In this document: positions 13,196 through 62,750 of the stretch, piece after piece
Numbering within the stretch: position 1 is the stretch's first letter
How the letters are laid out: every line of letters starts with the position of its first letter
Virus record (IMG/VR): IMGVR_UViG_3300036770_004723
Location: 62,001 to 126,000 of that record
Length of the DNA stretch: 64,000 nucleotides
Direction: 5' to 3' (one strand)
The notes under the pieces: model-generated
The model's database searches: none
The model's input: the letters and a program-made list of their open reading frames with translations, nothing else
Told to the model about the DNA's origin: nothing
Position numbers and translations under genes: made by a program

Positions 13196-14296
13196 TTACT
13201 TAATCAAACTACCCAATTCAACACGAGAAGACTTTTTAGTCTTTTTGGCTTTAGCTTTAGTTGTTTCCTCTTGTTCTTCCATACGCGCATCTAAAACTTT
13301 TTCCAAGTGCGCTAAATATGAAGTCGCTAGTATTTCACGTATTTCATCAAGATCTTCATTTTTTATCAAATCCTTAGGGATCCGAATTTTATACTTACGT
13401 GCGAAACGTTGCAGCTGACGCAGACCCATATCAACAAGATCTTCGGCGCAGGTAATTTCTTTACCATAATCAACGCCTTCATCTAAGGATACATGACCCT
13501 CTTCGTCTTCATAAGCAGCTTTAGCTATACCTTTATCAATATCACGGGCTATGTCACTAAGGCTGTAGATCTTAGTGCCTGCATCTTCAGCACGTTTTAG
13601 TTGATCACGGTTTCGTTTTGCAACAGAGCCAATGTCATCAATAAAGCCCATCACCCCGTTAGTGTTTAGTTTAAGATCAAAATCTGATTCAAGAGGTTTA
13701 ACTTTCTTATCAAACTTTTCAGGACTAGGATCTAAATAGAGACCTTTAAATTCTAACTTACGGCGCAACACTTCAAATTGAGGCAAAGTAAAAACATTTT
13801 TTTCATTACCCATATTCTGAAAAGACATAACAATCTTTCCATCATCACTACAGACTCTAATAAGGTTACTGTCCACACTCAAAATACGAGCAGTCATGAA
13901 ATTAGATAAATACGTGCGCGAAAGTGTACCACGATATCTAACATAAACTTTCTGCAAAAAAGTATAATTGTGTTTTCTAGTAATATTTTCATTTAATAAA
14001 ACCGCAGCAAAAGTACGTAATTGCTCTAAACTGAAGCCGCGAATTACGTCAGCTAATTCGAAAAGACTGCTGCCATTTTTTTCCACACTTTCAGCAAGCG
14101 CAACACTGTTAGGTGTAAAACTAGAACAAGATACATGGCTGGCTTTTTTGCCTTGTTTGCTACAAGTAACGTTTTCCCCGTTAATTAAACGTTCTCTGGT
14201 TAACCCTATACATTCACCACAGGTTAGTTTTTCTTCGGTTAATACTCTTACCCGAATTTTTTGTCCTGTCTTCTGAATAGTTGAGTTCTTTGCCAT
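13196..14296 (-). CDS. Hypothetical protein with Cys cluster and C-terminal HeH/Rho-N-like module
   Basis: CGEC..C..C; LVDMGLRQLQRFARKYKIRIP; ends SSRVELGSLIK. Confidence 0.7.
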   Translation of the reverse strand: MAKNSTIQKTGQKIRVRVLTEEKLTCGECIGLTRERLINGENVTCSKQGKKASHVSCSSFTPNSVALAESVEKNGSSLFELADVIRGFSLEQLRTFAAVLLNENITRKHNYTFLQKVYVRYRGTLSRTYLSNFMTARILSVDSNLIRVCSDDGKIVMSFQNMGNEKNVFTLPQFEVLRRKLEFKGLYLDPSPEKFDKKVKPLESDFDLKLNTNGVMGFIDDIGSVAKRNRDQLKRAEDAGTKIYSLSDIARDIDKGIAKAAYEDEEGHVSLDEGVDYGKEITCAEDLVDMGLRQLQRFARKYKIRIPKDLIKNEDLDEIREILATSYLAHLEKVLDARMEEQEETTKAKAKKTKKSSRVELGSLIK

Positions 14297-14792
14297 TTTT
14301 CTTATATCCTTTGGAACTTAATGTAAAGTTTATGCAAAACAGAAGAGTTTGTTCCATGTTTGTAATACCAGCCAAATCCTTTTTCAGCAATTCAAGACCT
14401 TGCCTTGTGGCAGGATCTGCATGTACCATAGGAAGCAACGTCATTTTTGCATTCGATGATACTGGAGGTCTTAATAGTGCATCTACTAATATCTTTAACC
14501 AAACTTCGGCACGTCTTTCCGCAGTTTCATCTGACCAGAATTTTTGAAGAGGACCAGACTTCTTTGCTCCTATACGCGCAACCACAGCATCTGCTTTTGC
14601 GTGAAGTGTTGTATGACAAGATCCATCAAGAGGTATTTGCAGACTTTCATGGCCACCGCACGATCTAGGTATAGTATGATGCCAATTAATATTTTTAAAA
14701 AAATTACCGCAAATACAACACTGTTCGAATCCATCTGATCTAGCAACTACAGGTAACTTATTTTCTATTTTTGTTTTTGACATTACGACCAC
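14214..14792 (-). CDS. HNH-family protein
   Basis: CCIC...WHHTIPRSCGG...SCHTTLH. Confidence 0.75.
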   Translation of the reverse strand: MVVMSKTKIENKLPVVARSDGFEQCCICGNFFKNINWHHTIPRSCGGHESLQIPLDGSCHTTLHAKADAVVARIGAKKSGPLQKFWSDETAERRAEVWLKILVDALLRPPVSSNAKMTLLPMVHADPATRQGLELLKKDLAGITNMEQTLLFCINFTLSSKGYKKNGKELNYSEDRTKNSGKSINRRKTNLW

Positions 14793-16071
14793 CTAAAGGC
14801 AGTCCCCAAGATAAAACTTTAACGTTGCCTTTAGTTTGGCTATAAAGGTTTCTATATACAGATGAAGGAACTACCCAAGCTAATGCAATGTCATTGTTTT
14901 TGGGGCTAGTTAAAAATTCAGAAGACATTAAACTATATTCATGCCCTCGCTCACGCAACTGTTCTAAAAATTCTGTTACTCTAGTGTAGTAAACATTAGA
15001 AGATTTTTTCTCAAGCGCTCTTACACGAGATTGATGTAAAGACTTTGATTCACTGACTCTTTTAATTGCTTTACCTATATTAGAATCTTGTCGATCTAAC
15101 TCTGATTGTTTTAAAGAAAGTTGTTCAGTAAGTTCCAGCTTTTTTACTTTAGTAAGTGTACCAATACGCTTATATGAAAGCAAAAGATTCTCAATCTTTT
15201 CTATTTCAGATTTAAGTTTACGCAGTTTAGATCGCTCAGACTTTAAATTAATTTTAGCCAATTTTAACTTGTTGGCAATCGGGTCATTGTCTACAATGTT
15301 ATGCGCGATTTCTTCGGCAGAAGTACGGCTAAATTGAAGAATTGTCTGCTTGGTCAATATCAAAGCTATATCACTGCTATCCGCAGCTGCCAGACCTAAA
15401 GGCTCTACAGTTTTAAAAACATTACGTAAAATTTTAGTGTTACGTAATGCAACGTTTTCGAATGAAACAGTAATAGGTAATTCAACTGGTAATACTGCGT
15501 CACGGGATATATCTAATTTCTCATTTTTAATTTTACTGACTAACGAATTTGATATCAACTTGGTGTAAGCAGAAAGCTTATTATTGACATATTCGTATTG
15601 AGCGTTAGAAAAATCACAATCGTTTTCTGTTACCTCAGAAGAAACTTTTTCTAAAGCTGCTTCAGGGTCTTCGTTGTATTTTTCAATTTGATTGTATGCT
15701 GCTGCTTGTAGATCTTGCAACCTATCGAATACATCTGTGCGAACTTCTTTGCAGAAAGTTGGTACATTTATTTCTCGATTGCTTACAGCATACTTTAAGG
15801 ATCTTATAGTATTAATTAGGTAGATTGTCGGCTTTTTCTGTTTTGAAAACTTACGATTTGATTTCGAAGCCGTCAAAAAATCTTCTAATTGATCTATAGT
15901 TGTTTGAAGGGTTTTTAAAGTTATATCTGCATTTTTAAAGTTTAAAGCATTATCTGCTTTTTTTATCAATTTTTGAGTTGAGCTAATGCTCGACATCAAT
16001 GATTGAAGTGCGTTGACTTCTGACATTGTTGTTATTCCTTTTTCCATTTTTTTAATAATATGGGTTTTCAC
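14758..16071 (-). CDS. Hypothetical coiled-coil protein
   Basis: Long ORF; start may be MSEVN (16025). Confidence 0.7.
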   Translation of the reverse strand: MKTHIIKKMEKGITTMSEVNALQSLMSSISSTQKLIKKADNALNFKNADITLKTLQTTIDQLEDFLTASKSNRKFSKQKKPTIYLINTIRSLKYAVSNREINVPTFCKEVRTDVFDRLQDLQAAAYNQIEKYNEDPEAALEKVSSEVTENDCDFSNAQYEYVNNKLSAYTKLISNSLVSKIKNEKLDISRDAVLPVELPITVSFENVALRNTKILRNVFKTVEPLGLAAADSSDIALILTKQTILQFSRTSAEEIAHNIVDNDPIANKLKLAKINLKSERSKLRKLKSEIEKIENLLLSYKRIGTLTKVKKLELTEQLSLKQSELDRQDSNIGKAIKRVSESKSLHQSRVRALEKKSSNVYYTRVTEFLEQLRERGHEYSLMSSEFLTSPKNNDIALAWVVPSSVYRNLYSQTKGNVKVLSWGLPLGGRNVKNKNRK

Positions 16072-16132: not shown

Positions 16133-19100
16133 TCAGTTTTTAGCCTTTTTCTTTTTGGCCGATTTTTTAGTTTCGGCAATAGAAGCGTTCATTAGCTTTA
16201 TATACTTATTTACAGATTCACTCAATGAAGAGGAAATACGCGGATTAGGATTTTTTAAATCTTTCTTCCAACCTTTAATATCAGCCTGCGCAGTCTTTAG
16301 CTTATCTTTAATAGTATTAAGCTCTAGCTTAGCCAAGCTACGCAACTTTCTTTCAATAATATAGGTTGCGCGTTCTCGATCAATCTTTAATGTTTTTGCT
16401 GCGTAGGTATCTGGATCATCTTTGTCCAAAGCCTTTTTCATTACCTCCAATACTTTATCTTTATTTATAACAGCAAACATTTGTGTTTCATATTCCCAAA
16501 TGTCACGCTCACGTTTGCTAATAACGTTTTCGAGATATTTTTGTTCTAAAACTATGCGGTATTTTACCCATTGGGTAATGTAATTACTAAAGTTTACATA
16601 AGCAAACTTTGTTTTCGTTTCATCGACATGGTTAACTACTAAACCTAAATTGTAGAATTGACTACCAGTTAAAATCTTTTTAACTTTTTCAGCTAAATCA
16701 TACAGGCCGTCGTCGTCAACACCGCGTTTAGGTACAACGTAGTAATATGCTCCGAATGCGCCAGCGTTCGGTCGCTTATCACCACAGTCGCTTACCCAAC
16801 GACTTACTCCAGGTAATTCACGAATTTTATCTCGCTTCTTTTCAACCATTTCTTCAGATTGAAAACCAGGTGCATAAGAAACAATTTCAATGATTTTATT
16901 TTTATAGTCAATATTTATCTTAGGGCGATATTTTATTGCCTTAGCTCGACCTGTTTTAATAAAATCTTCTAGTTCTTCTTTGGTAGAAACACATTCAGAT
17001 CCAAACGGCGCATTTATTCTTAAATGCTTGACACATTCTTCATCCGTAACTTTGCCTTTATTCAAAGCAATTTCAACCAACTTTGCAACACCTTCAATTT
17101 CAAAACTTGGATTACAGGCACGAACGCCATAGGCAATACCACCTTCGTTACCAATCAATAACATTGTTGGAAGCAATGAAGGCAAATATAATGGAATATC
17201 TTCACTGTCATCGAAGTTTTTAATTCTGGGAACAACTTCAAGATAACCACTATCAAGTAAAAACATTTTTGCGTAGTCGGCTAATCGCACTTCGGTATTA
17301 TGTACAATCATACCGTTCGCTGTATAAGAATTACTCACAGGAACAGTGAGATCGTAAGTAGGTTCATCTCCTATATACTCGATACGTTTGATAGGCACTA
17401 AGAAATAGTTCTTATCTAAAATATTAGTCAGTTTATCCACAAAAGTAGGGAAATATTTCCCTACAAATTTACCGACCTGTGTTAGCCAAAGTTTTAAAGA
17501 TTCTAAAGTCAATGGCATACTGCGTCCAGATAGTCCATATAGCATAGAGGCTATGTACTTAGGAATTGGATTGCCTTCTTCATCTTCTTGTTTACTCAGA
17601 ATGTCTTCATAATAAGATCGCACAACTTCAGGTAAGAAACTTAGTTTCTGATTATCATACGCCGAATTGAGTACATTACCGCTTTTACGTTCAGATAAAA
17701 ATCCGATTTCAGATTGAAATCTGTCGTGCATTAGTTTACTGCATAGATAAAGAGTGTCTTTAGTTTGTGCAAAAGGTAATCCAAATTTAGATACTAGAAT
17801 CGTCTGAAGTTGATCTAAAAGTTTGGAACTTTTGGATGTATACGTAACGCCGGACGCATGTGCAGATCCATCTCCTTCAAATAGTGAGGAAAGAAATGAA
17901 ACCATCTCGACTTTACTCGACATAAGTACGCATAGCGGAACTTCTTTCTCACGAGCAACACACGGAAAAATTCCATTAGCAGATAAAAAAGAAATTAAAT
18001 GCGTACTATTTATAGTACATTGGGCATACGGACGTTTAGCCCAATTTATACCATCAGGCTCACGCCATGTGACTGATACATGTACGTTTTCAAATAAAGA
18101 TTCAGTCAATTCTACAAATAAATCAACCATATCTTTATCAGAATTCATAAATTGGACTGTGTGTTTAGTAATGCTACCTTCTGAAATAACCAAACCTAAC
18201 CAAGTGGCGAATTCCGAAGACATTTTCTTGGGGAGACCTAATATCTTCATGGAAGAACTTCTACCTTCAATATCAGGCTGGTTTAAAAGTTTTGATCCTT
18301 TAGTCCATTTAATTTTAGGATCTCTTTTATAGCAAACTATGTCTCCTTCAGAAATATCTTCAATAGTTTTCCAACTAAAGTCTAGATTAGAATCTAAAGT
18401 AAGTAAAGGTTCATTACTTGTACCTTTAATTTTACCTAAGCGAGTTTCAACTTCAAAGATCTCACGAACACCACTGTCTAACCAGTGTGTAGCTAATTCA
18501 ACACCATCACGCGATTCAACTTTCAAAGAAATTTCTAGTTTGCGTTTAGGTGTCTTGCCTAAGACTTCAGGTATACGTCCAATAGGAAGTAAGCCTAATT
18601 CAGAACTAACTAAAGTATCAGCGGTAAAACAATAACGCTGGGCGGCAGCATTATCAATCGGTGAACCCCAGTTTCCACGACCTTGCGCAAGTTTTGGAAA
18701 AGTATTTGCAATAGTAACTAACGCGCCATAGCAGGCGCTATTATGCGCAAGCATTACTCTTAAACTGTTATCTTGTGAATTACGTCCAGTAGCAATCAAC
18801 ATGTTTTCATTACCTTTAACAGTAAAATCATACATTGGAATTGCTTTTTTACTTTTAACCAGTTTAATACTACGTACTGCTAAATATCCAGCAGTAGGTA
18901 ATCCTTCAATATAATCTCCATGATGTGAGGCATGTTCAGATCTATCAAGAACTACGATATTGTCCGGTCTATTATTTTCACGATCACCGTCACTATGATG
19001 ATAAATTTCGTCAGTGTCTTTATCATCATACAAGTAAGCTCCAGACAACTCATGAAGATTACAAGATACATGCGTATTCAGCGAAAGTTTATGGTAAGAT

Positions 19101-19747
19101 TCTCTTAAGATCTGCCCACCTACCAATTGCTGACCTACCTCCAAATTTTCTGTACTAATCCATTTACCTTCAACAGACATAAATGGATGGTTGCCAGTTG
19201 CTTTTACTACATCACCATTAGAAAGTTCAATATGATAAATGTCTTTAGTAACTTGCCCTACTCTAAATGAGTGCGCTAAAGCAGGCTCAATTATTTGTTT
19301 TTCTTCATTGTAAGACCAGACCCATATAGGATCTGATCCTAAAAGGTTTTTAATTTTGCGTACAGATCCATCACAACCTAACACACGAGTATTACCAGAT
19401 AGGCAATCGCCATGAGGGTGGTATTTACCTATGGTATCACCAATAACACGGGCAGATTTTTTAAAATCTGATCCATGTAAATTAAGTTTGTGCATTGCAT
19501 AAATCAAATGCCTGTGTACAGGTTTAAGTCCATCACGAAATTCTGGAACAGCTCTATCTTTTACAACATACTCACCATATTCAAATAAATTTTCTTTTGC
19601 AAAAACAGACATCATTGCAATAGAAATTTTGCTCTGTTTAATCGTGTTAGGTAAAACAAAATCGGTTTTAGTTGCCGGAAGTTTTTTAACTTTTTTTGTT
19701 TTAATTTCACCCAGCTCTACTCTGCCAGTCTTTTTTGTTTTTTTCAT
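16133..19747 (-). CDS. gyrA: Type IIA topoisomerase subunit A (GyrA/ParC-like, no beta-pinwheel CTD), two inteins
   Basis: DRAVPEFRDGLKPVHR, KSAR, GKYHPHGD|S, AAQRY|TE; start set at ATG 19747 because the -10 element lies at 19783-19788; about 537 aa after splicing. Confidence 0.93.
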   Translation of the reverse strand: MKKTKKTGRVELGEIKTKKVKKLPATKTDFVLPNTIKQSKISIAMMSVFAKENLFEYGEYVVKDRAVPEFRDGLKPVHRHLIYAMHKLNLHGSDFKKSARVIGDTIGKYHPHGDCLSGNTRVLGCDGSVRKIKNLLGSDPIWVWSYNEEKQIIEPALAHSFRVGQVTKDIYHIELSNGDVVKATGNHPFMSVEGKWISTENLEVGQQLVGGQILRESYHKLSLNTHVSCNLHELSGAYLYDDKDTDEIYHHSDGDRENNRPDNIVVLDRSEHASHHGDYIEGLPTAGYLAVRSIKLVKSKKAIPMYDFTVKGNENMLIATGRNSQDNSLRVMLAHNSACYGALVTIANTFPKLAQGRGNWGSPIDNAAAQRYCFTADTLVSSELGLLPIGRIPEVLGKTPKRKLEISLKVESRDGVELATHWLDSGVREIFEVETRLGKIKGTSNEPLLTLDSNLDFSWKTIEDISEGDIVCYKRDPKIKWTKGSKLLNQPDIEGRSSSMKILGLPKKMSSEFATWLGLVISEGSITKHTVQFMNSDKDMVDLFVELTESLFENVHVSVTWREPDGINWAKRPYAQCTINSTHLISFLSANGIFPCVAREKEVPLCVLMSSKVEMVSFLSSLFEGDGSAHASGVTYTSKSSKLLDQLQTILVSKFGLPFAQTKDTLYLCSKLMHDRFQSEIGFLSERKSGNVLNSAYDNQKLSFLPEVVRSYYEDILSKQEDEEGNPIPKYIASMLYGLSGRSMPLTLESLKLWLTQVGKFVGKYFPTFVDKLTNILDKNYFLVPIKRIEYIGDEPTYDLTVPVSNSYTANGMIVHNTEVRLADYAKMFLLDSGYLEVVPRIKNFDDSEDIPLYLPSLLPTMLLIGNEGGIAYGVRACNPSFEIEGVAKLVEIALNKGKVTDEECVKHLRINAPFGSECVSTKEELEDFIKTGRAKAIKYRPKINIDYKNKIIEIVSYAPGFQSEEMVEKKRDKIRELPGVSRWVSDCGDKRPNAGAFGAYYYVVPKRGVDDDGLYDLAEKVKKILTGSQFYNLGLVVNHVDETKTKFAYVNFSNYITQWVKYRIVLEQKYLENVISKRERDIWEYETQMFAVINKDKVLEVMKKALDKDDPDTYAAKTLKIDRERATYIIERKLRSLAKLELNTIKDKLKTAQADIKGWKKDLKNPNPRISSSLSESVNKYIKLMNASIAETKKSAKKKKAKN
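17297..18631 (-). mobile_element. GyrA intein 2 (445 aa, LAGLIDADG endonuclease) right after the catalytic Tyr
   Basis: RY|CFTADT...WLGLVISEG...FLSSLFEGDG...IVHN|T; same site as mycobacterial GyrA inteins. Confidence 0.95.
18740..19405 (-). mobile_element. GyrA intein 1 (222 aa, HNH motif)
   Basis: HPHGD|CLSGNT...ATGNHPF...HHSDGDRENNRPDN...LAHN|S. Confidence 0.93.
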
Positions 19748-20662: not shown

Positions 20663-21403
20663 TTAATCCGATTCAGTTAGACCTAATAGTTTTCTACGTG
20701 CTGAAGCATCTTCACCAACAACAGATTTAAAGAAATCTAGATCTTGTTTTACACTATCATATTCAATCTGAATAAGATTACGGTTAGTTGGATCGAACGC
20801 AATCGCCTCTAAAAGATCTGCGTTAGTTTCTCCCCAACCTTTAGCACGGAATACACTTCCCTTAGGTGCATTCTTAGGCAGCTGCTTTAAACATTCCTCA
20901 AATGAATCACCGCTGTAGTGTTTGCCATCAACCAAAGCATTGTACAAACTTGCTTGAACAACAAACAAACGTCCTTCCCGAATGAAATCTGGAAGCAACT
21001 TATAAAACAGTGCAATCAATAGTGTATTGATGTGTGAACCATCTGCGTCAGCATCTGCAAGTAACAAGCAAACTGCTGCACGTAGATTCTTGGTGCTGAA
21101 TGTTGGATTATCTGCTTTAACATCCAAACTTTTTATATCAACACCGAGACTTGCCAAAATATCTTGAATACGATCATTAGAAAGCAACTTAGGTAAACTA
21201 ACGTTTAAAGCATTCGGAATTTTACCACCGAGTTTCAATACTTCTTGATTGTAACCACGCGCATTCTTAGCGGAATTATGAACTACCGCTCCATTACCTA
21301 AACAGAAATTATGATTCTGCGTTACAGTTAGATCGTATACAGGTACAGGATTATCCAGCTTAATAGTCCGGATCGACCTTACCTTTATTGTTGATGGTGT
21401 CAC
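20663..21403 (-). CDS. gyrB: GyrB C-terminal gene: 43-aa C-intein plus 203-aa TOPRIM/tail extein
   Basis: AAAGGGGA SD then GTG at 21403; PVYDLTV..NHNF..NGAVVHN|SAKNAR...LGGKIPN...DADADGSHI...RAKGWGE. Confidence 0.92.
   Translation of the reverse strand: MTPSTIKVRSIRTIKLDNPVPVYDLTVTQNHNFCLGNGAVVHNSAKNARGYNQEVLKLGGKIPNALNVSLPKLLSNDRIQDILASLGVDIKSLDVKADNPTFSTKNLRAAVCLLLADADADGSHINTLLIALFYKLLPDFIREGRLFVVQASLYNALVDGKHYSGDSFEECLKQLPKNAPKGSVFRAKGWGETNADLLEAIAFDPTNRNLIQIEYDSVKQDLDFFKSVVGEDASARRKLLGLTESD
21275..21403 (-). mobile_element. Split intein, C-half (IntC)
   Basis: Blocks F and G, terminal HN followed by Ser+1; no N-terminal intein blocks. Confidence 0.92.
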
Positions 21404-21455
21404 ATGAATCCCCTTTAACAATGATAATTTAGACTTTTAATAAATAGGAGTTTAT

Positions 21456-22661
21456 ATGAACCTAATCAAGCTACATGCACAAGTATTAAAATTTCCAAAA
21501 GAGCTTAAAAAGATTCTGACTATGTTTATATCAAACAGAAACAGACGAGGTTGTAATGCTTTGCTTAATAAGCCTAATTCCAATATAGGTAAATTACTAC
21601 GTGATTCGTTTAAGTCCCCTATAAATAAGATTGCTATTTCAGATCTACATACAGCGTTAACAGGTGAAGCTTCTGCCGTATGTTTAAGAAAAGGATGTAC
21701 AAACAAAACAAATTACTGCTATGCCGACCGCAAATTTCGAGCGTGCTGTTCTAAGAAATGTGCAAACATATCAGGTTATACTCAAGCTAAACGTGAAGAA
21801 GTAATGCTTGATCGTCACGGTGTAAAAAACCCATACCAAATGCCTTCTACTAAGAAGAAAATTGAGGAAACTAATCTCAAAAAATATGGCGTAAAAAATC
21901 CTTCTTCGTCTGAAAAAGTAAAGCTTAAACGTAAGAAAACTTTTCAGGATCGTTATGGTATAAATTCACCAATGGAAAGTTCTGAATTTAAAGACAAACA
22001 AAGAGCCGTACTTTTAGAAAATCATGGTGTAGATAATCCAATGAAGTCTTCTAAAATTCGATCTGAAATGTCAGAAAGATTTAGAATGAAGCATGGTGTA
22101 ACTAATCCAATGCAAGTTCAAGAATTCGTAACTAAATCTCAGAAAAACTACGAATTGGCTTGCATTAAAAAGTATGGAGTACGTAATGCAATGCAGTCTC
22201 CAGAAATTCTTAAAATATGGTCCAGTGCGCAATCAAAAAGAACTGAAATTTCACTATGTGGTACAACACTAAATCTACAAGGCTATGAAGAACATGCGTT
22301 AAATTGTCTTTACCGATCAAAACCTTTCAAGTCAATAACTAATGATCCTACAAAGATGCCTCAGGTCAATTACACAATTAACGGTAAGTCGAGGGTGTAT
22401 CTGCCTGATGCTGCAATCAAAATGTTTGATGAATCTATAAGAGTGATCGAAGTAAAAAGCTGGTACACACTATCAAAAAAAGACAACTACTACAAATTTC
22501 GTGCAGCTACTAAATTTTATAACTCAATAGGTGTCGATTTTATTCTTGTAATCGTAGACGACAAAACAGGCGCATTAAAGATCTTATTTAATCCATATAA
22601 AGGGTTAAGATCTTTAATACGCGCAGCGAAAGTTCTTAGCTCAGGCCGTCGAACTTGGTAA
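21456..22661 (+). CDS. Free-standing putative homing endonuclease, antisense inside fractured gyrB
   Basis: GGAG SD; Cys motifs (CCSKKC), six [KR][YH]G[VI]x[NS][PA] repeats, C-terminal YLPD...VIEVK PD-(D/E)xK domain. Confidence 0.85.
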   Translation: MNLIKLHAQVLKFPKELKKILTMFISNRNRRGCNALLNKPNSNIGKLLRDSFKSPINKIAISDLHTALTGEASAVCLRKGCTNKTNYCYADRKFRACCSKKCANISGYTQAKREEVMLDRHGVKNPYQMPSTKKKIEETNLKKYGVKNPSSSEKVKLKRKKTFQDRYGINSPMESSEFKDKQRAVLLENHGVDNPMKSSKIRSEMSERFRMKHGVTNPMQVQEFVTKSQKNYELACIKKYGVRNAMQSPEILKIWSSAQSKRTEISLCGTTLNLQGYEEHALNCLYRSKPFKSITNDPTKMPQVNYTINGKSRVYLPDAAIKMFDESIRVIEVKSWYTLSKKDNYYKFRAATKFYNSIGVDFILVIVDDKTGALKILFNPYKGLRSLIRAAKVLSSGRRTW

Positions 22662-25812: not shown

Positions 25813-25814
25813 GG

Positions 25815-26174
25815 TTAACCTTCTATAAATCTTTCACTGAGAATTCTAATGCAAGTCTGTGTGACTATTTCATTTTTTTCTGGAAGAATATTTGAATTCA
25901 AATTCAAAACAAGTTCAGCATATTCTTTTAATATATCAGGATCAGTAATATCATTTATGGCTATTTCTGAAAAATTACTATCCATTGCTGTTACTTTAAA
26001 CAGCATTTTAGAATTAAGGCCATCACCATTTAAAGTAATAAGGAAAAAACAAGAATTTCTTTTTACTACACGAAAAATTTCCTTTTTTAATTCTTCGATA
26101 AGTTCTATGTGTTTACTTATAAAACTATGTGCTTCCAGTTCGGCAGCTTTGACCTTTCCTATTAACCAAGACAT
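25815..26174 (-). CDS. Hypothetical protein
   Basis: Coupled ORF. Confidence 0.6.
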   Translation of the reverse strand: MSWLIGKVKAAELEAHSFISKHIELIEELKKEIFRVVKRNSCFFLITLNGDGLNSKMLFKVTAMDSNFSEIAINDITDPDILKEYAELVLNLNSNILPEKNEIVTQTCIRILSERFIEG

Positions 26175-26584
26175 ATATTTTTGCCTATACGAGAAATAAG
26201 GTTTTTAGTTTTTTGTGTTACGTCGTTAATTATTTTTTCAGCGTTGTATCCACCGTCCTCAAGTCTTTTTACTAAAGGATTAAGAATATCTATAGCCGCT
26301 AAGAATCCGTTTTGTTTTTGTTCTAAAAGGGATAACTCAAGAGCGTAGGTAGATACAACAAATTCATGGTAGCATTTATCTTCTGGATCTAAATTAGATC
26401 CATTTATTAATCTAATAGATTTTAGATTATCTTGATTTAGACGAAAGATTGCTTTCTCTGTTTCTAGCAGATTAAGTTTATTTAAAAGTAAATGGTTTGA
26501 TAGAGTGGAGTAAATAGAGGAAATTTCCATAGAAGAGTTCAATATACAGTCTATATCATTAGAAAGCCCTAACAAATTTTCCAT
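26162..26584 (-). CDS. Hypothetical protein
   Basis: GGGAG SD. Confidence 0.65.
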   Translation of the reverse strand: MENLLGLSNDIDCILNSSMEISSIYSTLSNHLLLNKLNLLETEKAIFRLNQDNLKSIRLINGSNLDPEDKCYHEFVVSTYALELSLLEQKQNGFLAAIDILNPLVKRLEDGGYNAEKIINDVTQKTKNLISRIGKNICLG

Positions 26585-26616
26585 AATTTTTCTCCCGAAA
26601 AAAGATTAGTACAAGC

Positions 26617-26654: not shown

Positions 26655-26662
26655 TTTATAGA

Positions 26663-34763: not shown

Positions 34764-34821
34764 ATTATAACAAAAGGCGGCATTTATGTATACCGCCTTT
34801 TTTGACACACCAAGATTAGTT
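34764..34821 (-). promoter_or_regulatory. Sigma70 promoter with upstream box, overlapping a terminator-like hairpin
   Basis: AACTAATCTTGGTGTGTC-N11-TATACA-N17-TATAAT; AAAAGGCGG/CCGCCTTTT inverted repeat inside. Confidence 0.75.
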
Positions 34822-36822
34822 GGCGGTTGAGTTCAATTTTAAAATAGTTGTCAACTGCGAAAGTAATGAACCTACTTTATTTGGTGCCATATTAATGCGC
34901 TGTTTAGATAGTGTTTCGGTATATGAATCAAAGATTTGAAATACAGCATCAAACACTTTAATGGTAGAATCTCCAATTTCATTTTCTTGATCAGCGAACA
35001 GATTCAACGATACACCAAACTGTTTGATTATACTCATTAAAGGCTTTTCAGGCATTGTGGTCGATCCTAATGCCTGAACATTAAGGAGTTCCGAAGATAT
35101 TACACTAACACCTCGAATAATAGCTGCCATATCGACAAGCGAACTTAATTCATCAAGATTATTAATCAAGCGAATTAAGTTTTTTGCCCGCATTCCGGTA
35201 GTAATAGTAGTAGGTAATCCATAAGGAACATCCTGATAGATGTTTTTGATGTCACTGCTTTCTTTAACTCCCACAGTGTATTGGAAAATATCTTCTAAGC
35301 CTAAAGCAACGAATAAGGCTCTTAGAGTATTTCCGCCGTAAGTAAGTAATTCACCTGCAAGATTTTCGTCAAACTGTCCATCTCGGCTATACAAGCTTTT
35401 CATAGTAACTAAGGCCGTATATGCACTGTTACTATCATAATCTACTTTTTTATCCAAGAAACCTTGGAAGAAGTTCATAAGGAAAAAAGAAATAGGGGCT
35501 TTACTTCTCTTCAACCAGTTTCTGTAATTGGTTAATTCAGGATTATGTAAAGCACTTAAAATATTTATTACAGGCTCCAGAACCACATTACCTAAGTGGT
35601 GTGTCAGAGTTAAAAACTTTTCTATTGTAGTGTAATCAATAATCGGTTCTTTTTGAGTCAGACAACGCAAAAGACTCATTAAATCAATCAGAACACCTAG
35701 ATTAGTTGTACGACTATTTCTTGCAACTCGTACATGTGCCTGTGTATTTAAAAACATGGCGGTTACTTGAGTCAAAAGTAATCTTAAAGATGTATCAAGT
35801 ACCGCAATATTCTTTTCATTCGACCTAATAAGAGTATTTACATCGTAAGGTTCAAATAAAAGGCTAATGTAGATCTTGGCTAAGTTTACCGCTTGTTTTT
35901 CACTTACTTCAGTGAATTTACCTACGCAAGTTAAACTCAAAGGATTAGGTTGAAGATTAACATAATCAGGTAATACCGAAATTAATTTATCAGGATCCAT
36001 TAAAAGTTGTTCAGCTGGTTCCTTATTACCTAAAGCTTTCAATGTCTGTTTAAATTCAGAAAGCAATTGTTTTGAATGCTTTTCCGTAAACCAACTTAAA
36101 TCAGGCAAAGCTTCGATAGCATTTTCTGACAGATCCACTTCAGGTCCTAGAACATCAACTGATTTGTTACCTGCCTGACTTTCTTCTGTTTCTACTGGCT
36201 CGGGTTTAGTTTGAACTTTTACAAAACTACTTAATTCAACACGTCCCGATTTTGTAGATGATTGTGTTGATAAGTCCGTGTCTGTTTTTACGGGTGTAAT
36301 TTCATCAAGCATTTTATTTCGGATTTCCTTTGAATCCAAAAGTGCATATAATTGATGGAACATAAACGATGATACGAGGATCATCCAATTGTTTTCATTA
36401 CACTTTCTTAACCATTGTACGATCTCAGGGTACACGGAACCTAAACTTGTAGATTTTTCATTTAAGATAGCGTGTTTGTAATTAAGTGCAGCCCCAAGCG
36501 GAAGTAAATTGCACTTAGAGATATCCTCAAGTTTTATACCTTTAACTTTAGGTCGCTGAACATTTTCAATTTTCTCCATAATAGGTTCGGAGAATTCGAT
36601 TTGAAAAAACACAAAAGACTCTGGAACATTACATACATTACGCAAAGAAGAAAGCCTTTCTTCTGAAAGTAACTGGAAATGCTCACTAACGTTCAACATG
36701 TTGACACCATTCACAAGAATGAGTCCATTTCCACGAATAGATTTCATAACGAATAATTCGGAAATACCTACTATTACTGAATTAACGCTAACGAAACTTA
36801 ATGGTGTATTTGCAGCTATCAT
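34816..36822 (-). CDS. Hypothetical protein (668 aa)
   Basis: Long ORF, GAGGA SD; KSGRVELSSF in the linker. Confidence 0.8.
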   Translation of the reverse strand: MIAANTPLSFVSVNSVIVGISELFVMKSIRGNGLILVNGVNMLNVSEHFQLLSEERLSSLRNVCNVPESFVFFQIEFSEPIMEKIENVQRPKVKGIKLEDISKCNLLPLGAALNYKHAILNEKSTSLGSVYPEIVQWLRKCNENNWMILVSSFMFHQLYALLDSKEIRNKMLDEITPVKTDTDLSTQSSTKSGRVELSSFVKVQTKPEPVETEESQAGNKSVDVLGPEVDLSENAIEALPDLSWFTEKHSKQLLSEFKQTLKALGNKEPAEQLLMDPDKLISVLPDYVNLQPNPLSLTCVGKFTEVSEKQAVNLAKIYISLLFEPYDVNTLIRSNEKNIAVLDTSLRLLLTQVTAMFLNTQAHVRVARNSRTTNLGVLIDLMSLLRCLTQKEPIIDYTTIEKFLTLTHHLGNVVLEPVINILSALHNPELTNYRNWLKRSKAPISFFLMNFFQGFLDKKVDYDSNSAYTALVTMKSLYSRDGQFDENLAGELLTYGGNTLRALFVALGLEDIFQYTVGVKESSDIKNIYQDVPYGLPTTITTGMRAKNLIRLINNLDELSSLVDMAAIIRGVSVISSELLNVQALGSTTMPEKPLMSIIKQFGVSLNLFADQENEIGDSTIKVFDAVFQIFDSYTETLSKQRINMAPNKVGSLLSQLTTILKLNSTAN

Positions 36823-52454: not shown

Positions 52455-53519
52455 TTACTTCTTTGCTTTTTTCTTTAATGGCTTTTTCAGATCAGATTTC
52501 TTCTTAAGAGGTTTTTTAGGTTTTTTCTTACCTAAAGAGTCGTCGTCATCGTTGTCGATTTTAGATTTCTTCTTAAGAGGTTTTTTAGATTTTTTCTTAC
52601 CTAAAGAGTCGTCATCGTCGTCATCGTCATCGTCGTCATCGTCGTCGTCATCGTCGTTGTCGATTTTAGATTTCTTCTTAAGAGGTTTTTTAGATTTTTT
52701 CTTACCTAAAGAATCATCATCGTCTTCATCGTCTTCAATATCGGTCCCACCAATAATGTCCATCTTTTTAAAATCTTCATCGGCTTCTTTTTGAGATTTA
52801 ACTCCCAATTTCTCTATTAAGCTAGAGCTTAGATCCCATACCAGATATTGTTTTTCTTCTTCTGTCAGTGGACTATGTTCTCCACGATCTATACTATACT
52901 TGTCGCCGCCACTTTTGGAATTATCAAAAGAGATAGCAATATCAATACCGAACTTATCGTGAGTGACAGGGAAAGGTTTCTTTTCACCTGATTTTTTATC
53001 TTTATGTACGTTACGTTTTTCTAATTTCTGGATTTTCTCAGCTAAACTTCCAGGAAGTGAAACTACTTTAACAGGCGACCATGTTTTGCTTCCCATCTGA
53101 ATAAAGCCAGTTTTCTTTTCTTCAGAACTGAGTTTTTGCTTTAAAGCAGCTCGTGGCATGTCAGCTTGTAGATCACGTACAATGGCATTTGCATAATATT
53201 TTACACTGGTCTGGCAGGCACCATCTTCACCTTGAGATAATTCACAGTAAGGGCATTTTACACCTTTTAAAGGAACTTTTTCATTAGTTGGATCAAAGGC
53301 CACACACCAACGACTTACCTTGATCTCACGCTTGTCTTTTCCTCCACGGATTTTAATCCAATGTTGCTTTAGAGGTAAGATAGGTAGATTTAAAAAACGA
53401 AAATCACTGAAATCCCCGTTATCAGGAAACTTATGGATACCTAAAATTTCATCTAGGCGTCCTTCATCTTTGTATTTATTGTTACCTGATTTTGGATCGA
53501 TAGAGCCGAATCCCGACAT
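52455..53519 (-). CDS. Single-stranded DNA-binding protein (gp32-like) with block-charged tail
   Basis: FRFL, HW, CPYC, YYANAIVR, GIDIAI; located next to recA. Confidence 0.75.
   Translation of the reverse strand: MSGFGSIDPKSGNNKYKDEGRLDEILGIHKFPDNGDFSDFRFLNLPILPLKQHWIKIRGGKDKREIKVSRWCVAFDPTNEKVPLKGVKCPYCELSQGEDGACQTSVKYYANAIVRDLQADMPRAALKQKLSSEEKKTGFIQMGSKTWSPVKVVSLPGSLAEKIQKLEKRNVHKDKKSGEKKPFPVTHDKFGIDIAISFDNSKSGGDKYSIDRGEHSPLTEEEKQYLVWDLSSSLIEKLGVKSQKEADEDFKKMDIIGGTDIEDDEDDDDSLGKKKSKKPLKKKSKIDNDDDDDDDDDDDDDDDDSLGKKKSKKPLKKKSKIDNDDDDSLGKKKPKKPLKKKSDLKKPLKKKAKK
52490..52737. repeat. Coding repeat (Dn-SLGKKKSKKPLKKKSKID) x3
   Basis: Repeated gatttcttcttaagaggttttttag. Confidence 0.85.
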
Positions 53520-53550: not shown

Positions 53551-54579
53551 TTATTTATTTACAGATTTCGTAGATTTAAGATTTTCCATTATCTTAAGTT
53601 CTTCGTTTGTAAATACTTCTGGTAAGTCTAAATACAATCGTGCCAATCCATGAGGATCTGCACGTTTTGCAAATAGATACAACATTCTTAGTTCGCTGTT
53701 CACAGCATATTCTTCATCTAGATCTTCAGTTTCAGCACTTAAAATTTCATGTAGTGTGCTATCACCATCTTCTTCACCTGAAGCTAAAAGATAATCCATT
53801 GATGTAGAAAAATTAACAGACGTTTTATTGTCTGACATTATCTTTTTCTGATTTTGTGGAATAGTATAAGCTATTCCGTACTCATGTTCGCTGCTGTTAC
53901 AAGTTAAACTATTTAACATCCAATATTTTATATAACTTGTTAGTGCGCCTTTACTGCTATCATATTTATTCAAGGCCACTACAACATTACGCATAAAATT
54001 TTGAACTACATCCCGATAATCGTATGTATTACCTGTGTTAGTATCACGTAAATGTTTTGCTTGCGTATGGGAAAGTTTTATGTATTGGTCTACAATACTT
54101 GAGAAGTAGTCATAAAATTGCTTTAATGGAACACTAGGTAAAGTAACTGAAACAAACATGTCTTGTATGGAATTAGATCCTACTTCTTTAACATAGGGAT
54201 CCATCCTTTCTTTGTAGGAAATTCTTTTGCTTGAATCCGACAAATAACAATAATAAAGATCTAAAAAAGGTTTTCTATACTCTTCTAAAAATTTTTTAAC
54301 AAAAACATGTATAAAGCTTCTTTCGATCTTTAATTTTTTTATTAACTCAAGTTTTTTAACTCTATCTGTTGTTATGATGGCTTGACTTAAGTGATCGATG
54401 GTTTCATTTCTATCTAGTGCGCAGAATCTTCGTTTTTTATTCTTTATTACAGCGGTTAAAAGGTAACAAAGCTGACTATCAAATACATCTGTGTGTAGCA
54501 CTATAGGTTCCAATGCTTTGTATAAGAAACTATCCATGATTTCTTGTATTTGACCGCCGGTAAGATTTTCTTTGGTCAT
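53551..54579 (-). CDS. Phage RNA polymerase sigma factor
   Basis: YRDVVQNFMRNVVVALNKYDSSKGALTSYIKYWM matches region 2; STSMD...STLHEIL matches region 3; region 4 not evident. Confidence 0.8.
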   Translation of the reverse strand: MTKENLTGGQIQEIMDSFLYKALEPIVLHTDVFDSQLCYLLTAVIKNKKRRFCALDRNETIDHLSQAIITTDRVKKLELIKKLKIERSFIHVFVKKFLEEYRKPFLDLYYCYLSDSSKRISYKERMDPYVKEVGSNSIQDMFVSVTLPSVPLKQFYDYFSSIVDQYIKLSHTQAKHLRDTNTGNTYDYRDVVQNFMRNVVVALNKYDSSKGALTSYIKYWMLNSLTCNSSEHEYGIAYTIPQNQKKIMSDNKTSVNFSTSMDYLLASGEEDGDSTLHEILSAETEDLDEEYAVNSELRMLYLFAKRADPHGLARLYLDLPEVFTNEELKIMENLKSTKSVNK

Positions 54580-54673
54580 AAGAAATTCCTTATAGCAAGT
54601 ATTAACCTATATTTACAGTTTTGTCATTTATACGAAAAAAGGCAGCCATAATAGGCCGCCTATTTAAACAATA

Positions 54674-58520: not shown

Positions 58521-58592
58521 GGCTATTTTCCTTCTAACAGGTTAAACTGTAAATACTGTAGTATAAATTATGATTAAACCTGAGTATGTAAC

Positions 58593-61513: not shown

Positions 61514-61595
61514 AAACTTATTCCTTAAGTCAAGTGTATCTAAATTAATATCCGATAATTTATATCCGAATATCCTGAAAAGAAGGTACAATGTA

Positions 61596-62750
61596 ATGAG
61601 TTGGTTAGATACCGCTAAAAAACGTGGTAGACGTAATGCCAAGAATTTCACGTATGAACGTGCGCAAAAACGTCTTAACGAAGCACTGCCTATATTCCAA
61701 CAGCAAATTGAAAATGCGTTACAGGTAGATAAAGTACATGCAGTTATTGCAAAACGTTTAAGAACAGGACGTTATTGTACATGCTGTAAAAGACTAGAAT
61801 CAATTAATAACATAGATACAACTTTGATCGACCTAGATCCAGAAAACGAACAAACAGTTTCAACGTCTGTTAGTGTCACACCTGACGCACCAAGAAAAAC
61901 AATCAACGTTGATCTAGGGCCAAGTTCTTTGTTTGGTTCAGATCTAACTCAAAGAGATAATACTGAACCTCTTAAATCTAATAGAGTTGAATTAGGGGAT
62001 TTCGAAACAGAAGAAAGAAATAAGGTAAAGGAAACAGCAACCACAATACCTCTAGATTTTGAGGACTTGGTAACAGAAGGTACTGGAGTAGATTGTGGAA
62101 TTTGTTTTCGTGAAGGACGTGAACCACCTTTTGAATTCACTAACTACCGCCAAAGTTTAATGACAAGTTTGGATATAGGTGAATGTTATGGATATTATTT
62201 AGATGATGGCGCACCTTGCAATATAGTACAGCAAGACAAAGAAGGCTACGTGTGTTTTGATATTCTTGTACCAAAGTATTTTATCAGCGTAGAATACAGT
62301 ATAAGAAATAACACTTCGGTACTACCTTCTTCTGCACGTTTTTATCTTGATAACACTAACGAGTTGCTTACAAAACAACATTTGGAAAATAGTAGAGGTA
62401 AAGCTATTCGTATATGTGTCCGTAACGTAGCTACGTTCACTCATTGTATAGTCATGTTTAAGCTAAGTAACGATAGTATTCAGGCCAATATCAGTCAAGA
62501 AAACGAAATGATCAACTACGAAAACGAAGTTACTATAGGTGACATTACTGTAGTTCTTCCGGCTAGAGTAGGTCTATTTCGGTCAGAAGATTTTATCATT
62601 ATACCAGAACGTAATTTGGTACTAAAGGTAAATGACAACCCACGTAAAAGCACCGCTGATAGGCAAGTATGGGAATGGATGGCAACAACACGCGCTGTTC
62701 AAAGATCAGAAGCAACCAACAGCATTTTTAAACACTATAAACTATATTGA
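61596..62750 (+). CDS. Probable virion neck/head-closure protein
   Basis: YCTC...CGICF..G pattern seen in myovirus neck proteins (inference). Confidence 0.5.
   Translation: MSWLDTAKKRGRRNAKNFTYERAQKRLNEALPIFQQQIENALQVDKVHAVIAKRLRTGRYCTCCKRLESINNIDTTLIDLDPENEQTVSTSVSVTPDAPRKTINVDLGPSSLFGSDLTQRDNTEPLKSNRVELGDFETEERNKVKETATTIPLDFEDLVTEGTGVDCGICFREGREPPFEFTNYRQSLMTSLDIGECYGYYLDDGAPCNIVQQDKEGYVCFDILVPKYFISVEYSIRNNTSVLPSSARFYLDNTNELLTKQHLENSRGKAIRICVRNVATFTHCIVMFKLSNDSIQANISQENEMINYENEVTIGDITVVLPARVGLFRSEDFIIIPERNLVLKVNDNPRKSTADRQVWEWMATTRAVQRSEATNSIFKHYKLY

What the first reader, a model, noticed from the sequence alone, without database searches (positions are those of the whole stretch)
13205..62003. 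Shared short linear motif K[ST]xRVEL[GS]x[ILF] in four unrelated proteins
Seen: KSSRVELGSL (C-terminus of the 13196 ORF; 13205-13234), KTGRVELGEI (N-tail of GyrA; 19703-19732), KSGRVELSSF (linker of the 34816 ORF; 36223-36252) and KSNRVELGDF (insert in the 61596 ORF; 61974-62003). All lie in low-complexity tails or linkers, and the codons differ (AGA/CGT, GAG/GAA, CTG/TTG/TTA), so selection is on the peptide and not the DNA. Inference: a docking code for a common hub, analogous to clamp-binding or SSB-tail motifs, or a protease, packaging or localisation signal, linking a topoisomerase to a putative virion protein.
Basis: partly seen in the sequence, partly recalled or inferred. Interest (0 to 1): 0.72.

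Follow-up and report, generated by a model that had tools for sequence, protein, structure and literature searches.

The report
Shared docking peptide in jumbo phage
Eight otherwise unrelated proteins of an uncultured 287-kb jumbo phage, including a topoisomerase II subunit and a neck-like virion protein, carry the same 7-10-residue peptide in floppy tails; relatives keep it at the same places, so it is almost certainly a docking tag for one common, still unidentified partner.

Summary
All four peptides sit at the stated coordinates (three on the minus strand). The strict regex occurs 4 times against 0.0005 expected. A whole-genome scan of the 286,584-bp phage adds four more instances, giving R[VI]EL[GSN][DES][ILFV] 8 observed against 0.03 expected. 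Codons differ, so selection acts on the peptide.

Orthologs in eight related jumbo-phage genomes (PaBG/Lu11/Y3 group) keep a motif at the same positions. Its spelling varies by lineage: xELGDΦ, I[SE]L[SD]DΦ, or ΦxV[SR]G. In a 319-kb relative, all six hits fall in orthologs of the same proteins. 43 of 44 distinct C-termini of the 13196-ORF family end in such a strand-like motif; the 44th is cut short.

It is therefore a genuine short linear motif shared by six conserved families plus two lineage-specific ones. The partner is not identified. My best guess (about 0.4) is a virion-incorporation or cargo-loading tag, like encapsulin targeting peptides. One client folds like a phage neck protein, and two lie in a gene module whose PaBG counterpart holds two proteins found in PaBG virions. 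Binding to the phage's own beta sliding clamp is the main rival (about 0.2). One complex prediction gave no answer.

The parts
13205..13234 (-). Motif instance 1, KSSRVELGSL, two residues before the C-terminus of the 366-aa protein P0001
   Evidence: the C-terminal tail has pLDDT below 50 after a long helix. Orthologs from 63 loci give 44 distinct C-termini, and 43 of them end in a related motif; the 44th is cut short.
13196..14296 (-). Client gene P0001 (phrog_17701). It has a Zn-ribbon-like CxxC...C...C and a small beta-barrel core. The 'DNA topoisomerase' label is not supported.
19703..19732 (-). Motif instance 2, KTGRVELGEI, in the Lys-rich N-terminal tail of the topoisomerase II medium (GyrA/T4 gp52-like) subunit
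   Evidence: orthologous N-tails carry KTELGDI, VAVDDL, GIEVADI, VIALSDM and VQIEVSN.
16133..19747 (-). Client gene: topo II medium subunit interrupted by two inteins (HNH type and LAGLIDADG type)
   Evidence: PF00521, PF14890, PF14528, PF13392; the G001 ortholog has no inteins and is 547 aa.
36223..36252 (-). Motif instance 3, KSGRVELSSF, in an acidic/Ser-Thr-rich linker of the 668-aa protein P0003
   Evidence: P0003 matches no family, and only a weak relative exists in G001, so conservation of this instance is not shown.
34816..36822 (-). Client gene P0003, function unknown, lineage-specific
61974..62003 (+). Motif instance 4, KSNRVELGDF, in a roughly 100-residue disordered loop of P0004
   Evidence: In 12 homologs down to 38% identity it is the best-kept of two small conserved islands in an otherwise variable loop (E132, G134, D135 kept in 90% or more). 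pLDDT is below 50 for residues 66-165.
61596..62750 (+). Client gene P0004 (phrog_21298): four conserved Cys plus a beta-barrel resembling phage neck/stopper proteins, with an inserted CBM-like jelly-roll
   Evidence: PBSX XkdH Z 8.8, phage 812 neck Z 8.2, and more than 15 further neck or connector chains.

Best explanation
The peptide is a genuine short linear motif. In this phage it reads R-[V/I]-E-L-[G/S/N]-[D/E/S]-Φ. Across the clade it is a strand-like Φ-x-Φ-[G/S/D/A]-[D/S/E]-Φ. It sits in disordered, usually Lys-rich tails or linkers of six conserved protein families: P0001; the topo II medium subunit; the neck-like P0004; an HExxH zincin; a Lys-repeat/helical protein; and a 461-aa protein. 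Two lineage-specific proteins also carry it.

Shown: enrichment, peptide-level selection, and retention at orthologous positions in relatives. Inferred: the motif docks all these proteins onto one common partner, probably by adding a beta-strand followed by a Gly/Asp turn. The neighbouring Lys-rich segments probably hold DNA.

My preferred partner is a structural component of the procapsid or portal-neck region. The motif would then be a virion-incorporation (cargo-loading) tag that places the topoisomerase subunit, the zincin and DNA-binding proteins in or at the head together with the neck protein. It would work like encapsulin targeting peptides or the T4 capsid-targeting sequence. I put about 0.85 on 'common docking motif' and about 0.4 on the virion-loading version.
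For: Enrichment: strict regex 4 observed against 0.0005 expected; relaxed 8 against 0.03; 0 of 2000 shuffles reach the observed counts.

Synonymous codon variety.

Conservation at the same positions:
- P0004 family alignment.
- Erwinia phage Y3 orthologs: gp331, gp329, gp184, gp180 and gp221.
- PaBG, Lu11, NCTB, fHe-Yen9-02 and JA29.
- The complete 319.5-kb relative G001: six hits against 0.32 expected, all in orthologs of clients.
- P0001-family C-termini: 43 of 44 distinct ones from 63 IMG/VR loci end in a related motif; the 44th is cut short.

Within-genome similarity of the P0001 C-terminus and the topo II N-tail exceeds cross-genome pairings (permutation p = 0.02). Examples are KTELGDM/KTELGDI in G001 and RVELGS/RVELGE here.

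Disorder around the motif.

For the virion version:
- The P0004 C-domain matches many phage neck, stopper and connector chains (weaker support).
- Clients #6 and #7 flank the head-to-tail joining gene (phrog_17327). In PaBG the syntenic module holds virion proteins gp191 (histone-like) and gp202 (giant helicase-like) (PMC7412058 Table 1; gene map).
- The motif resembles the encapsulin Family 1 targeting consensus SDGSLGIGSLKRS and the N-terminal TVGSL, which likewise occur at C- or N-termini behind flexible linkers (PMC8346489). Compare VELGSLIK here.
Against: - No partner was identified.
- The only complex prediction tried used the clamp, not a capsid protein, and gave no answer.
- None of the clients is among the 12 virion proteins visible in my excerpt of PaBG Table 1 (the paper reports 14, from Coomassie bands only).
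- Packaging of a type II topoisomerase subunit or a zincin into phage heads has no precedent that I know of.
- The topo II gene has a sigma70-like TTGATT-N17-TATAAT upstream, which suggests early expression.
- The neck-like match of P0004 has Z 7-9, which the tool notes is near the background for best hits.
- The folds of P0001, #6 and #7 are uninformative.
- Within-genome co-variation is only modest (p = 0.02) and is confounded by the Lys-rich flanks.
Confidence: 0.4

Rival explanations
1. Clamp-binding motif. The peptide tethers its carriers to the phage-encoded beta sliding clamp (genome 156032-157150, next to PolA), in the way bacterial QL[SD]LF-type motifs and PIP boxes do. The Lys-rich flanks would contact the DNA that the clamp encircles.
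For: - The phage encodes a divergent but clear beta clamp: a profile of 122 homologs hits T. maritima beta (1vpk) at E = 1e-23 over the full length.
- It also encodes a clamp loader.
- The published consensus is QL(S/D)LF and is described as tolerant of variation (PMC9690074).
- From my own knowledge, the E. coli variants QVELEF and QLVLGL resemble RVELGxΦ, and the spacing 1-4-7 resembles a PIP box.
- The motifs lie at extreme termini with basic flanks.
- One client is a topoisomerase. The zincin gives a sub-threshold SprT-like hint (E = 0.06).
Against: - PolA, the expected prime client, lacks the motif. It has a different N-terminal hexapeptide ([HY]-Φ-x-Φ-[DP]-[FY]) that does not shift between lineages, whereas the studied motif does.
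- P0004 looks like a neck protein.
- Clients #6 and #7 lie in a virion-associated module.
- The Arg standing where the clamp motif has Gln is not conserved in relatives.
- All complete relatives checked have the clamp, so there is no phyletic discrimination.
Confidence: 0.2
2. Docking onto some other common partner. Candidates are the 2022-aa helicase-like protein, the phage SSB or UvsX, a chaperone, or a host protein. The purpose could be localisation, assembly of a DNA-processing complex, or regulated turnover.
For: The same evidence as for a docking motif in general. Nothing so far singles out one partner. The N-terminus of the giant helicase-like protein has a related AP[IV]EL[ND] element here and in G001.
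Against: No positive evidence for any particular candidate. The client list (one neck-like protein plus two in a virion-associated gene module) leans towards the virion.
Confidence: 0.25
3. Recognition or cleavage site of the head-maturation protease (or another phage protease).
For: - PaBG virion proteins are proteolytically processed (PMC7412058).
- Distant P0001-family C-termini end in ΦxRGG followed by 1-6 residues, which looks like a ΦxGG-type site.
- Two HExxH proteins and a head protease are encoded.
Against: - The major capsid protein, the main substrate, has no motif at its N-terminal region in this phage, G001 or Y3.
- No scissile-site residue is conserved across the lineage variants.
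- Instances 3-9 residues from a terminus would release only a stub.
Confidence: 0.07
4. Chance, compositional bias of Lys-rich low-complexity regions, or a DNA-level element (repeat, promoter, packaging site) that happens to be translated.
For: Instances lie in low-complexity regions of an AT-rich genome (34.6% GC).
Against: - 0 of 2000 shuffles reach the observed counts.
- Codons differ, including two-family Arg and Leu codons.
- The motif is kept at orthologous positions at 30-60% protein identity.
- Instances are on both strands.
Confidence: 0.01

Closest known systems
Encapsulin Family 1 targeting peptides / cargo-loading peptides (consensus SDGSLGIGSLKRS; N-terminal TVGSL variant)
   Same: - A short Φ-x-Φ-G-S-L-K-like peptide (compare VELGSLIK, VELGDIKK).
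- Found at C-termini, N-termini or between domains, behind flexible linkers.
- Shared by unrelated cargo proteins.
- Binds the inside of an HK97-fold shell that is related to phage capsids (PMC8346489).
   Different: - Here the carriers are phage proteins, including a topoisomerase subunit and a neck-like protein.
- No encapsulin is involved.
- Binding to the capsid protein is untested.
- The encapsulin pocket uses an N-terminal helix specific to Family 1 shells.
- The spelling of the motif varies by phage lineage.
Bacterial beta-clamp-binding motif QL[SD]LF and eukaryotic/archaeal PIP box
   Same: - A short hydrophobic/acidic peptide in disordered termini of many unrelated DNA-handling proteins.
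- All such peptides bind one cleft of a ring-shaped hub.
- Basic flanks are common.
- The phage has its own clamp.
   Different: - Arg or a variable residue replaces the hallmark Gln.
- The spacing is seven residues.
- The motif is absent from PolA.
- Clients include a neck-like protein.
- Binding is untested.
Phage T4 capsid-targeting sequence of internal proteins (own knowledge: about 10 N-terminal residues, removed by the gp21 protease after LxE)
   Same: A short shared peptide that directs several unrelated proteins, including an enzyme (Alt), into the prohead for injection with the DNA.
   Different: - The T4 signal is strictly N-terminal and is followed by a cleavage site.
- Here the positions are N-terminal, C-terminal and internal.
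- No cleavage motif is evident.
- There is no sequence similarity.
Phage P1 Dar system (own knowledge: the roughly 250-kDa helicase/methylase DarB and partners are packaged into heads in a fixed order)
   Same: A giant helicase-like protein is found in virions (PaBG gp202; homolog here at genome 145669-151737). It is encoded with small partner proteins, two of which carry the motif.
   Different: No homology to Dar proteins was shown, and as far as I know no short shared peptide is described for Dar.

Membership tests
Beta-clamp-binding motif (QL[SD]LF / QLxLxL) | Consensus with leading Gln and hydrophobic residues at positions 2, 4 and 5 or 6 | tested here: not met
   All 8 instances have Arg, not Gln, with hydrophobic residues at positions 2, 4 and 7. 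The Arg is not kept in relatives. This is a resemblance only.
Beta-clamp-binding motif (QL[SD]LF / QLxLxL) | A cognate sliding clamp is present | tested here: met
   P0017, genome 156032-157150: the family profile hits PDB beta clamps (1vpk E = 1.2e-23).
Beta-clamp-binding motif (QL[SD]LF / QLxLxL) | The replicative polymerase carries the same motif | tested here: not met
   PolA has no R[VI]EL-type motif. Its N-tail carries a different conserved hexapeptide.
Beta-clamp-binding motif (QL[SD]LF / QLxLxL) | The peptide binds the hydrophobic cleft between clamp domains II and III | tested here: inconclusive
   Complex prediction with the clamp dimer plus P0004:119-146 returned 'no answer' (score 0.00, peptide under 30 residues), which is neither for nor against.
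Encapsulin-type targeting peptide / cargo-loading peptide | Consensus around LGIGSLK / TVGSL | tested here: inconclusive
   The pattern Φ-x-Φ-G-[SDE]-Φ-(K) is shared. The P0001 instance VELGSLIK is the closest. There is no statistical test of similarity.
Encapsulin-type targeting peptide / cargo-loading peptide | Terminal position behind a flexible linker on otherwise unrelated cargo proteins | tested here: met
   Four of 8 instances are within 20 residues of a terminus and the rest are in linkers or N-terminal extensions. AF2 gives pLDDT below 50 for the two instances modelled (P0004, P0001).
Encapsulin-type targeting peptide / cargo-loading peptide | Binds the luminal face of an HK97-fold shell protein, and the cargo is found inside the shell | not testable with these tools
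The PaBG virion proteome in the literature is shallow: the paper reports 14 proteins, of which my excerpt of Table 1 shows 12.
T4-type capsid-targeting sequence | N-terminal location followed by a prohead-protease cleavage site | tested here: not met
   Positions are N-terminal, C-terminal and internal, and no conserved cleavage residue follows.
Head-maturation protease cleavage site | Present in the major capsid protein propeptide and other processed head proteins | tested here: not met
   The MCP N-terminal regions of this phage, G001 and Y3 lack the motif.
PIP box (Qxx[LIVM]xx[FY][FY]) | Gln at position 1 and an aromatic pair at positions 7-8 | tested here: not met
   No Gln. Position 7 is I/L/F/V and position 8 is variable. 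The clamp is of the beta type, not PCNA.

The most novel reading that the evidence does not exclude
A clade of jumbo myophages loads a defined set of proteins into or onto the head-neck region by means of an encapsulin-like cargo-loading peptide. The set would include a type II topoisomerase subunit, a zinc protease and Lys-rich DNA-binding proteins. These enzymes would then travel with the genome and be delivered into the next host. It would be a direct functional bridge between phage capsids and encapsulin nanocompartments, and the first packaged phage topoisomerase that I know of.
Probability: 0.25. Interest if true: 0.85.

Novelty: new variant of a known kind. Interest (0 to 1): 0.62.

Why it matters
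Short linear motifs that wire many proteins to one hub are well known in cells (clamp, PCNA, SSB tails). In phages they are known for only a few systems.

This is a clean, statistically unambiguous case in a poorly studied group of jumbo phages (PaBG/Lu11/Y3 relatives, mostly hypothetical proteins). It groups six protein families of unknown or disparate function into one functional set. It also gives a handle for finding their common partner: a 10-residue peptide.

If the partner is a capsid or neck protein, the motif is a portable packaging tag. It could be used to load foreign proteins into jumbo-phage heads, and it would imply that a topoisomerase is carried in the virion. If the partner is the clamp, it defines the binding code of a very divergent phage clamp.

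Cultured relatives exist in laboratory hosts, so either outcome is directly testable.

Tried and rejected
- Complex prediction of the clamp dimer (alignment A3) with P0004:119-146 returned 'no answer', score 0.00. It is not evidence either way.
- Megablast of the topo II gene against phage records found no match.
- Pfam beta-clamp N- and C-domain models and the T4 gp45 model found nothing in the genome. Only the central-domain model gave a weak lead (E = 0.005), later confirmed with a family profile.
- A protein-atlas look-up of the 376-aa neighbour of client #7 was uninformative.
- An IMG/VR scan for P0003 relatives found none.
- PDB sequence searches with P0001, the P0004 family and the zincin found nothing.
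- A fold search of the P0001 model found no match above Z 6, so the PHROG label 'DNA topoisomerase' is not supported.
- Lenient Pfam scans of #5, #6, #7, P0003 and the connector gave only sub-threshold hits.
- The literature (PaBG paper, Dickeya jumbo-phage paper, jumbo-phage comparative genomics) does not mention the motif, and no deep virion proteome of a relative was found.
- Phyletic test: all three complete relatives searched have the clamp, so this does not discriminate.
- Promoter analysis found a GTAAATA-type box before both replication and structural genes, so expression class does not separate the hypotheses.
- Candidate weak instances were considered and not counted: the FEN, clamp-loader and UvsX N-termini, and the SSB DDDDSLGKKK repeats. 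They are either part of folded domains or do not follow the pattern.
- A ubiquitin-like C-terminal RGG reading of distant P0001 tails was rejected, because other clients carry the motif N-terminally or internally.


Full report
**Setting.** The window is bases 62,001-126,000 of a single 286,584-bp contig with 34.6% GC. IMG/VR classes it as a complete virus record. By tblastn its nearest named relatives, at about 35% protein identity, are jumbo myophages: Erwinia phages Y3, Alexandra and Yoloswag; Dickeya phages JA and AD1; Pseudomonas phages PaBG and Lu11; phage NCTB; and Yersinia phage fHe-Yen9-02. Gene order is largely syntenic with Y3.

**The observation.**
Three are on the minus strand.
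- They lie at the C-terminus of a 366-aa protein (P0001); in the N-terminal Lys-rich tail of the GyrA/T4 gp52-like topoisomerase II subunit, which also carries two inteins; in a linker of a 668-aa orphan (P0003); and in a long loop of a 384-aa protein (P0004).
- Over my 387 ORF calls (91,958 residues) the strict regex is expected 0.0005 times and never arose in 2000 within-protein shuffles.
- A six-frame scan of the whole genome found RVEL only seven times, six of them followed by G or S, plus one RIELG. The four new instances lie outside the window:

| Client | Genome position | Context |
|---|---|---|
| #5, HExxH 'peptidase', 390 aa | 127053 | KKNRVELGEVK |
| #7, 461 aa | 139073 | SNRIELGDLP |
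| #6, 243-aa Lys-repeat/helical protein | 143448 | MSRVELGDIKK, at the very N-terminus |
| #8, 115 aa | 212574 | MTRVELNDF |

- The relaxed pattern R[VI]EL[GSN][DES][ILFV] is 8 observed against 0.03 expected. I wrote this pattern after seeing the hits, so the a-priori regex is the fair test.
- Arg is encoded by CGT, AGA and CGC, and Leu by TTG, CTG, TTA and CTA. Selection is therefore on the peptide.

**Conservation in relatives.**
- In twelve P0004 homologs down to 38% identity, the motif is the best-kept of two small conserved islands in an otherwise variable loop. The variants are xRVELGDF, RLELGDF, HMELGDF, RVEIGDM, PIELGDM, EIEVGDI and DVELGDL. E132, G134 and D135 are kept in at least 90%.
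- I fetched the whole Y3 genome and the orthologs from five further phages. The orthologs carry a related peptide at the same place:

| Family | Position | Variants in relatives |
|---|---|---|
| P0001 | C-terminus | IVELGDLDD*, DDIELGDL*, AIELSDLAD*, PIELSDY*, VIISVSGD*, RVLTVRGDEGEDE* |
| Topo II medium subunit | N-tail | VVAVDDLP, GIEVADIK, VIALSDMQ, VQIEVSN |
| #6 | N-terminus | MPAISLDDIG, MATSISLDDL, MSEEFELGDLP, RRIDVSGVD, KPISVRGGD |
| #7 | N-terminal region | TIELADI, AIELSDL, DDIELGDIKK |
| #5 | N-terminal extension | VKIDVTVEKK, QSIDVSGS |

- In Y3, JA29 and fHe-Yen9-02 the #5 ortholog lacks the whole N-terminal extension, and the motif goes with it.
- The spelling therefore comes in lineage variants: xELGDΦ; I[SE]L[SDA]DΦ; and Φ-x-V-[ST/R]-G. 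The common denominator is Φ-x-Φ-small/acidic-acidic-Φ, a strand-like pattern followed by a turn.
- An IMG/VR scan with the P0001 family returned 63 loci. These give 44 distinct C-termini, and 43 of them end in such a motif, including VKVRNVRGGAE and DVIVRVRGGGAK in distant contigs of about 310 kb. The 44th (L105) is cut short.
- The complete 319.5-kb relative G001 has 57-65% identity in most client proteins (46-73% overall). There, [KR][TVI]E[LIV][GSN][DES]Φ occurs six times against 0.32 expected, and all six are in orthologs of P0001, topo II, P0004, #5, #6 and #7.
- P0003 and #8 are not supported in the same way. I treat them as lineage-specific or doubtful.
- The P0001 C-terminus resembles the topo II N-tail of its own genome more than those of other genomes (permutation p = 0.02). 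The Lys-rich flanks blur this test, and in the Erwinia phages the two proteins use somewhat different spellings.

**What the carriers are.**
- The topo II subunit is clear.
- P0001 has a conserved CxxC...C...C and a small barrel. No fold match reaches Z 6, so its PHROG label 'DNA topoisomerase' is unsupported.
- The AlphaFold model of P0004 has a confident beta-rich C-domain (pLDDT 80-93) and a disordered stretch at residues 66-165 that holds the motif. An exhaustive structural comparison puts PBSX XkdH (Z 8.8), the phage 812 neck (Z 8.2) and more than fifteen other neck, stopper or connector chains at the top. These include Chi, Milano, GTA, Pam3, XM1, phiKZ, Bxb1 and SaPI1. A carbohydrate-binding-module-like jelly-roll is inserted in the domain (weaker Foldseek support). 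The Z values are near the tool's stated background for best hits, but the repetition of one protein class is persuasive. P0004 is probably a neck protein.
- Clients #7 and #6 flank a 'head-to-tail joining' gene (phrog_17327). The module begins with a histone-H1-like Lys/Ala-rich protein and ends with a 2022-aa helicase-like protein. In PaBG the syntenic module is gp191-gp202. Both gp191 (same Lys/Ala-rich composition) and gp202 (the homolog of the helicase-like protein) were identified in purified virions (PMC7412058; gene map; sequences).
- PaBG gp193 in that module also carries the local variant, DVQISVDG.

**What the partner could be.** I considered two concrete partners.
- *The phage's own beta sliding clamp.* A weak Pfam lead led to a 371-aa protein next to PolA. 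Its family profile (122 homologs) matches PDB beta clamps over the full length (1vpk, E = 1.2e-23). The motif resembles clamp-binding motifs: QL(S/D)LF (PMC9690074) and, from my own knowledge, E. coli QVELEF and QLVLGL. It also shares the PIP-box habit of terminal position with basic flanks. Against this, PolA lacks the motif. Its N-tail has a different hexapeptide (HIAIDF, HVELDY, HLTLDY, here IVSVKLPY) that does not change between lineages while the studied motif does. In addition, at least one client looks structural.
- *The virion.* A complex prediction for the clamp gave no answer and is not evidence, which leaves the virion reading untested but better supported by context. A procapsid, portal or neck component would make the motif a cargo-loading tag. 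The pattern Φ-x-Φ-G-[SDE]-Φ-K is strikingly like the encapsulin Family 1 targeting consensus SDGSLGIGSLKRS and the N-terminal TVGSL. Those peptides also sit at either terminus behind flexible linkers and bind the inside of an HK97-fold shell (PMC8346489). From my own knowledge, T4's capsid-targeting sequence and P1's Dar proteins are functional precedents for packaging enzymes.
- *A general maturation-protease site* is unlikely. The major capsid protein lacks the motif in three genomes, and no scissile residue is conserved.

**Verdict.**
- A real, conserved short linear motif that defines a set of six protein families: confidence about 0.85.
- Virion incorporation: about 0.4. Clamp binding: about 0.2. 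Another hub: about 0.25. Protease site: about 0.07. Artefact: about 0.01.
- I found no description of the motif in the papers searched. It is a new variant of a known kind of system (a hub-docking or cargo-loading peptide).
- The decisive experiments are virion proteomics and peptide pull-down in the cultured relatives.

Noticed in passing
window 20663-21421 (-), 21456-22661 (+), 22636-25812 (-): The topo II large (GyrB-like) subunit is encoded in two minus-strand ORFs (1058 aa and 252 aa, both matching the Y3 'topo II large subunit'). A 401-aa plus-strand ORF separates them. The downstream piece begins with an intein-like ...NGAVVHNS junction. This may be a split or trans-splicing intein, or an intein disrupted by an inserted gene.
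   Followed up: no
window 16133-19747 (-): The topo II medium subunit carries two inteins, one with an HNH domain and one with a LAGLIDADG domain. The ortholog in the 319.5-kb relative G001 has no inteins and is 547 aa.
   Followed up: partly
e.g. window 53556-53563 (before SSB), 54610-54617 (before the sigma factor), 58548-58555 (before primase), 5748-5755 (before portal); genome-wide: A box AAACTGTAAATA lies about 35-45 nt upstream of many start codons, including SSB, sigma factor, primase, clamp loader, PolA, FEN and portal. The 8-mer CTGTAAAT is seen upstream of 14 genes against 0.7 expected. It is probably a phage promoter class. The topo II medium subunit instead has a sigma70-like TTGATT-N17-TATAAT.
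   Followed up: partly
genome 156032-157150 (+) = L009:1018-2136: A highly divergent beta sliding clamp sits next to PolA. Pfam misses it in the single sequence; it is recognised only through a profile of 122 homologs (1vpk E = 1e-23). A large family of such proteins, about 370-400 aa long, exists in metagenomes: 138 representatives at the 50% identity level.
   Followed up: yes
genome 152354-155641 (+) = L039:354-3641; relatives L040-L044, P0163-P0179: The N-terminal tail of PolA carries a conserved hexapeptide [HY]-Φ-x-Φ-[DP]-[FY] (HIAIDF, HVELDY, HLTLDY; here IVSVKLPY). It is a candidate clamp-binding motif, and unlike the studied motif it does not vary by lineage.
   Followed up: partly
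genome 138088-138759 (+) = L001:12088-12759: A histone-H1-like Lys/Ala-rich protein with AGKAPKAP repeats. It matches PaBG gp191, an abundant virion protein, in composition and in gene position.
   Followed up: partly
window 52455-53519 (-): The gp32-like SSB ends in a poly-Asp run and three repeats of DDDDSLGKKKSKKPLKKKSK. Many replication proteins in this clade (PolA, UvsX, and in Y3 also DnaB and the clamp loader) have Lys-rich tails.
   Followed up: no
window 61596-62750 (+), residues 104-114 of P0004: A second conserved island lies in the disordered loop, [IV]DLGxxxxFG (G108, F113 and G114 invariant in 12 homologs), about 20 residues upstream of the motif. It may be a second docking element.
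   Followed up: no
genome 145669-151737 (+); G001 21489-27557: The N-terminus of the 2022-aa helicase-like protein (homolog of PaBG virion protein gp202) has AP[IV]EL[ND] here and in G001. This may be a degenerate copy of the motif.
   Followed up: no
genome 184855-185802 (+), just after the head protease gene: A second HExxH protein (THEYAHYIFDH) is encoded directly downstream of the head-maturation protease. Its relation to the motif-bearing zincin #5 is unclear.
   Followed up: no
L089, L092-L107 (IMG/VR contigs of about 300-315 kb): Distant members of the P0001 family end in V[KR]V[RS][NT]VRGG followed by 1-3 residues. This superficially resembles the ubiquitin LRLRGG tail with a short propeptide.
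   Followed up: no
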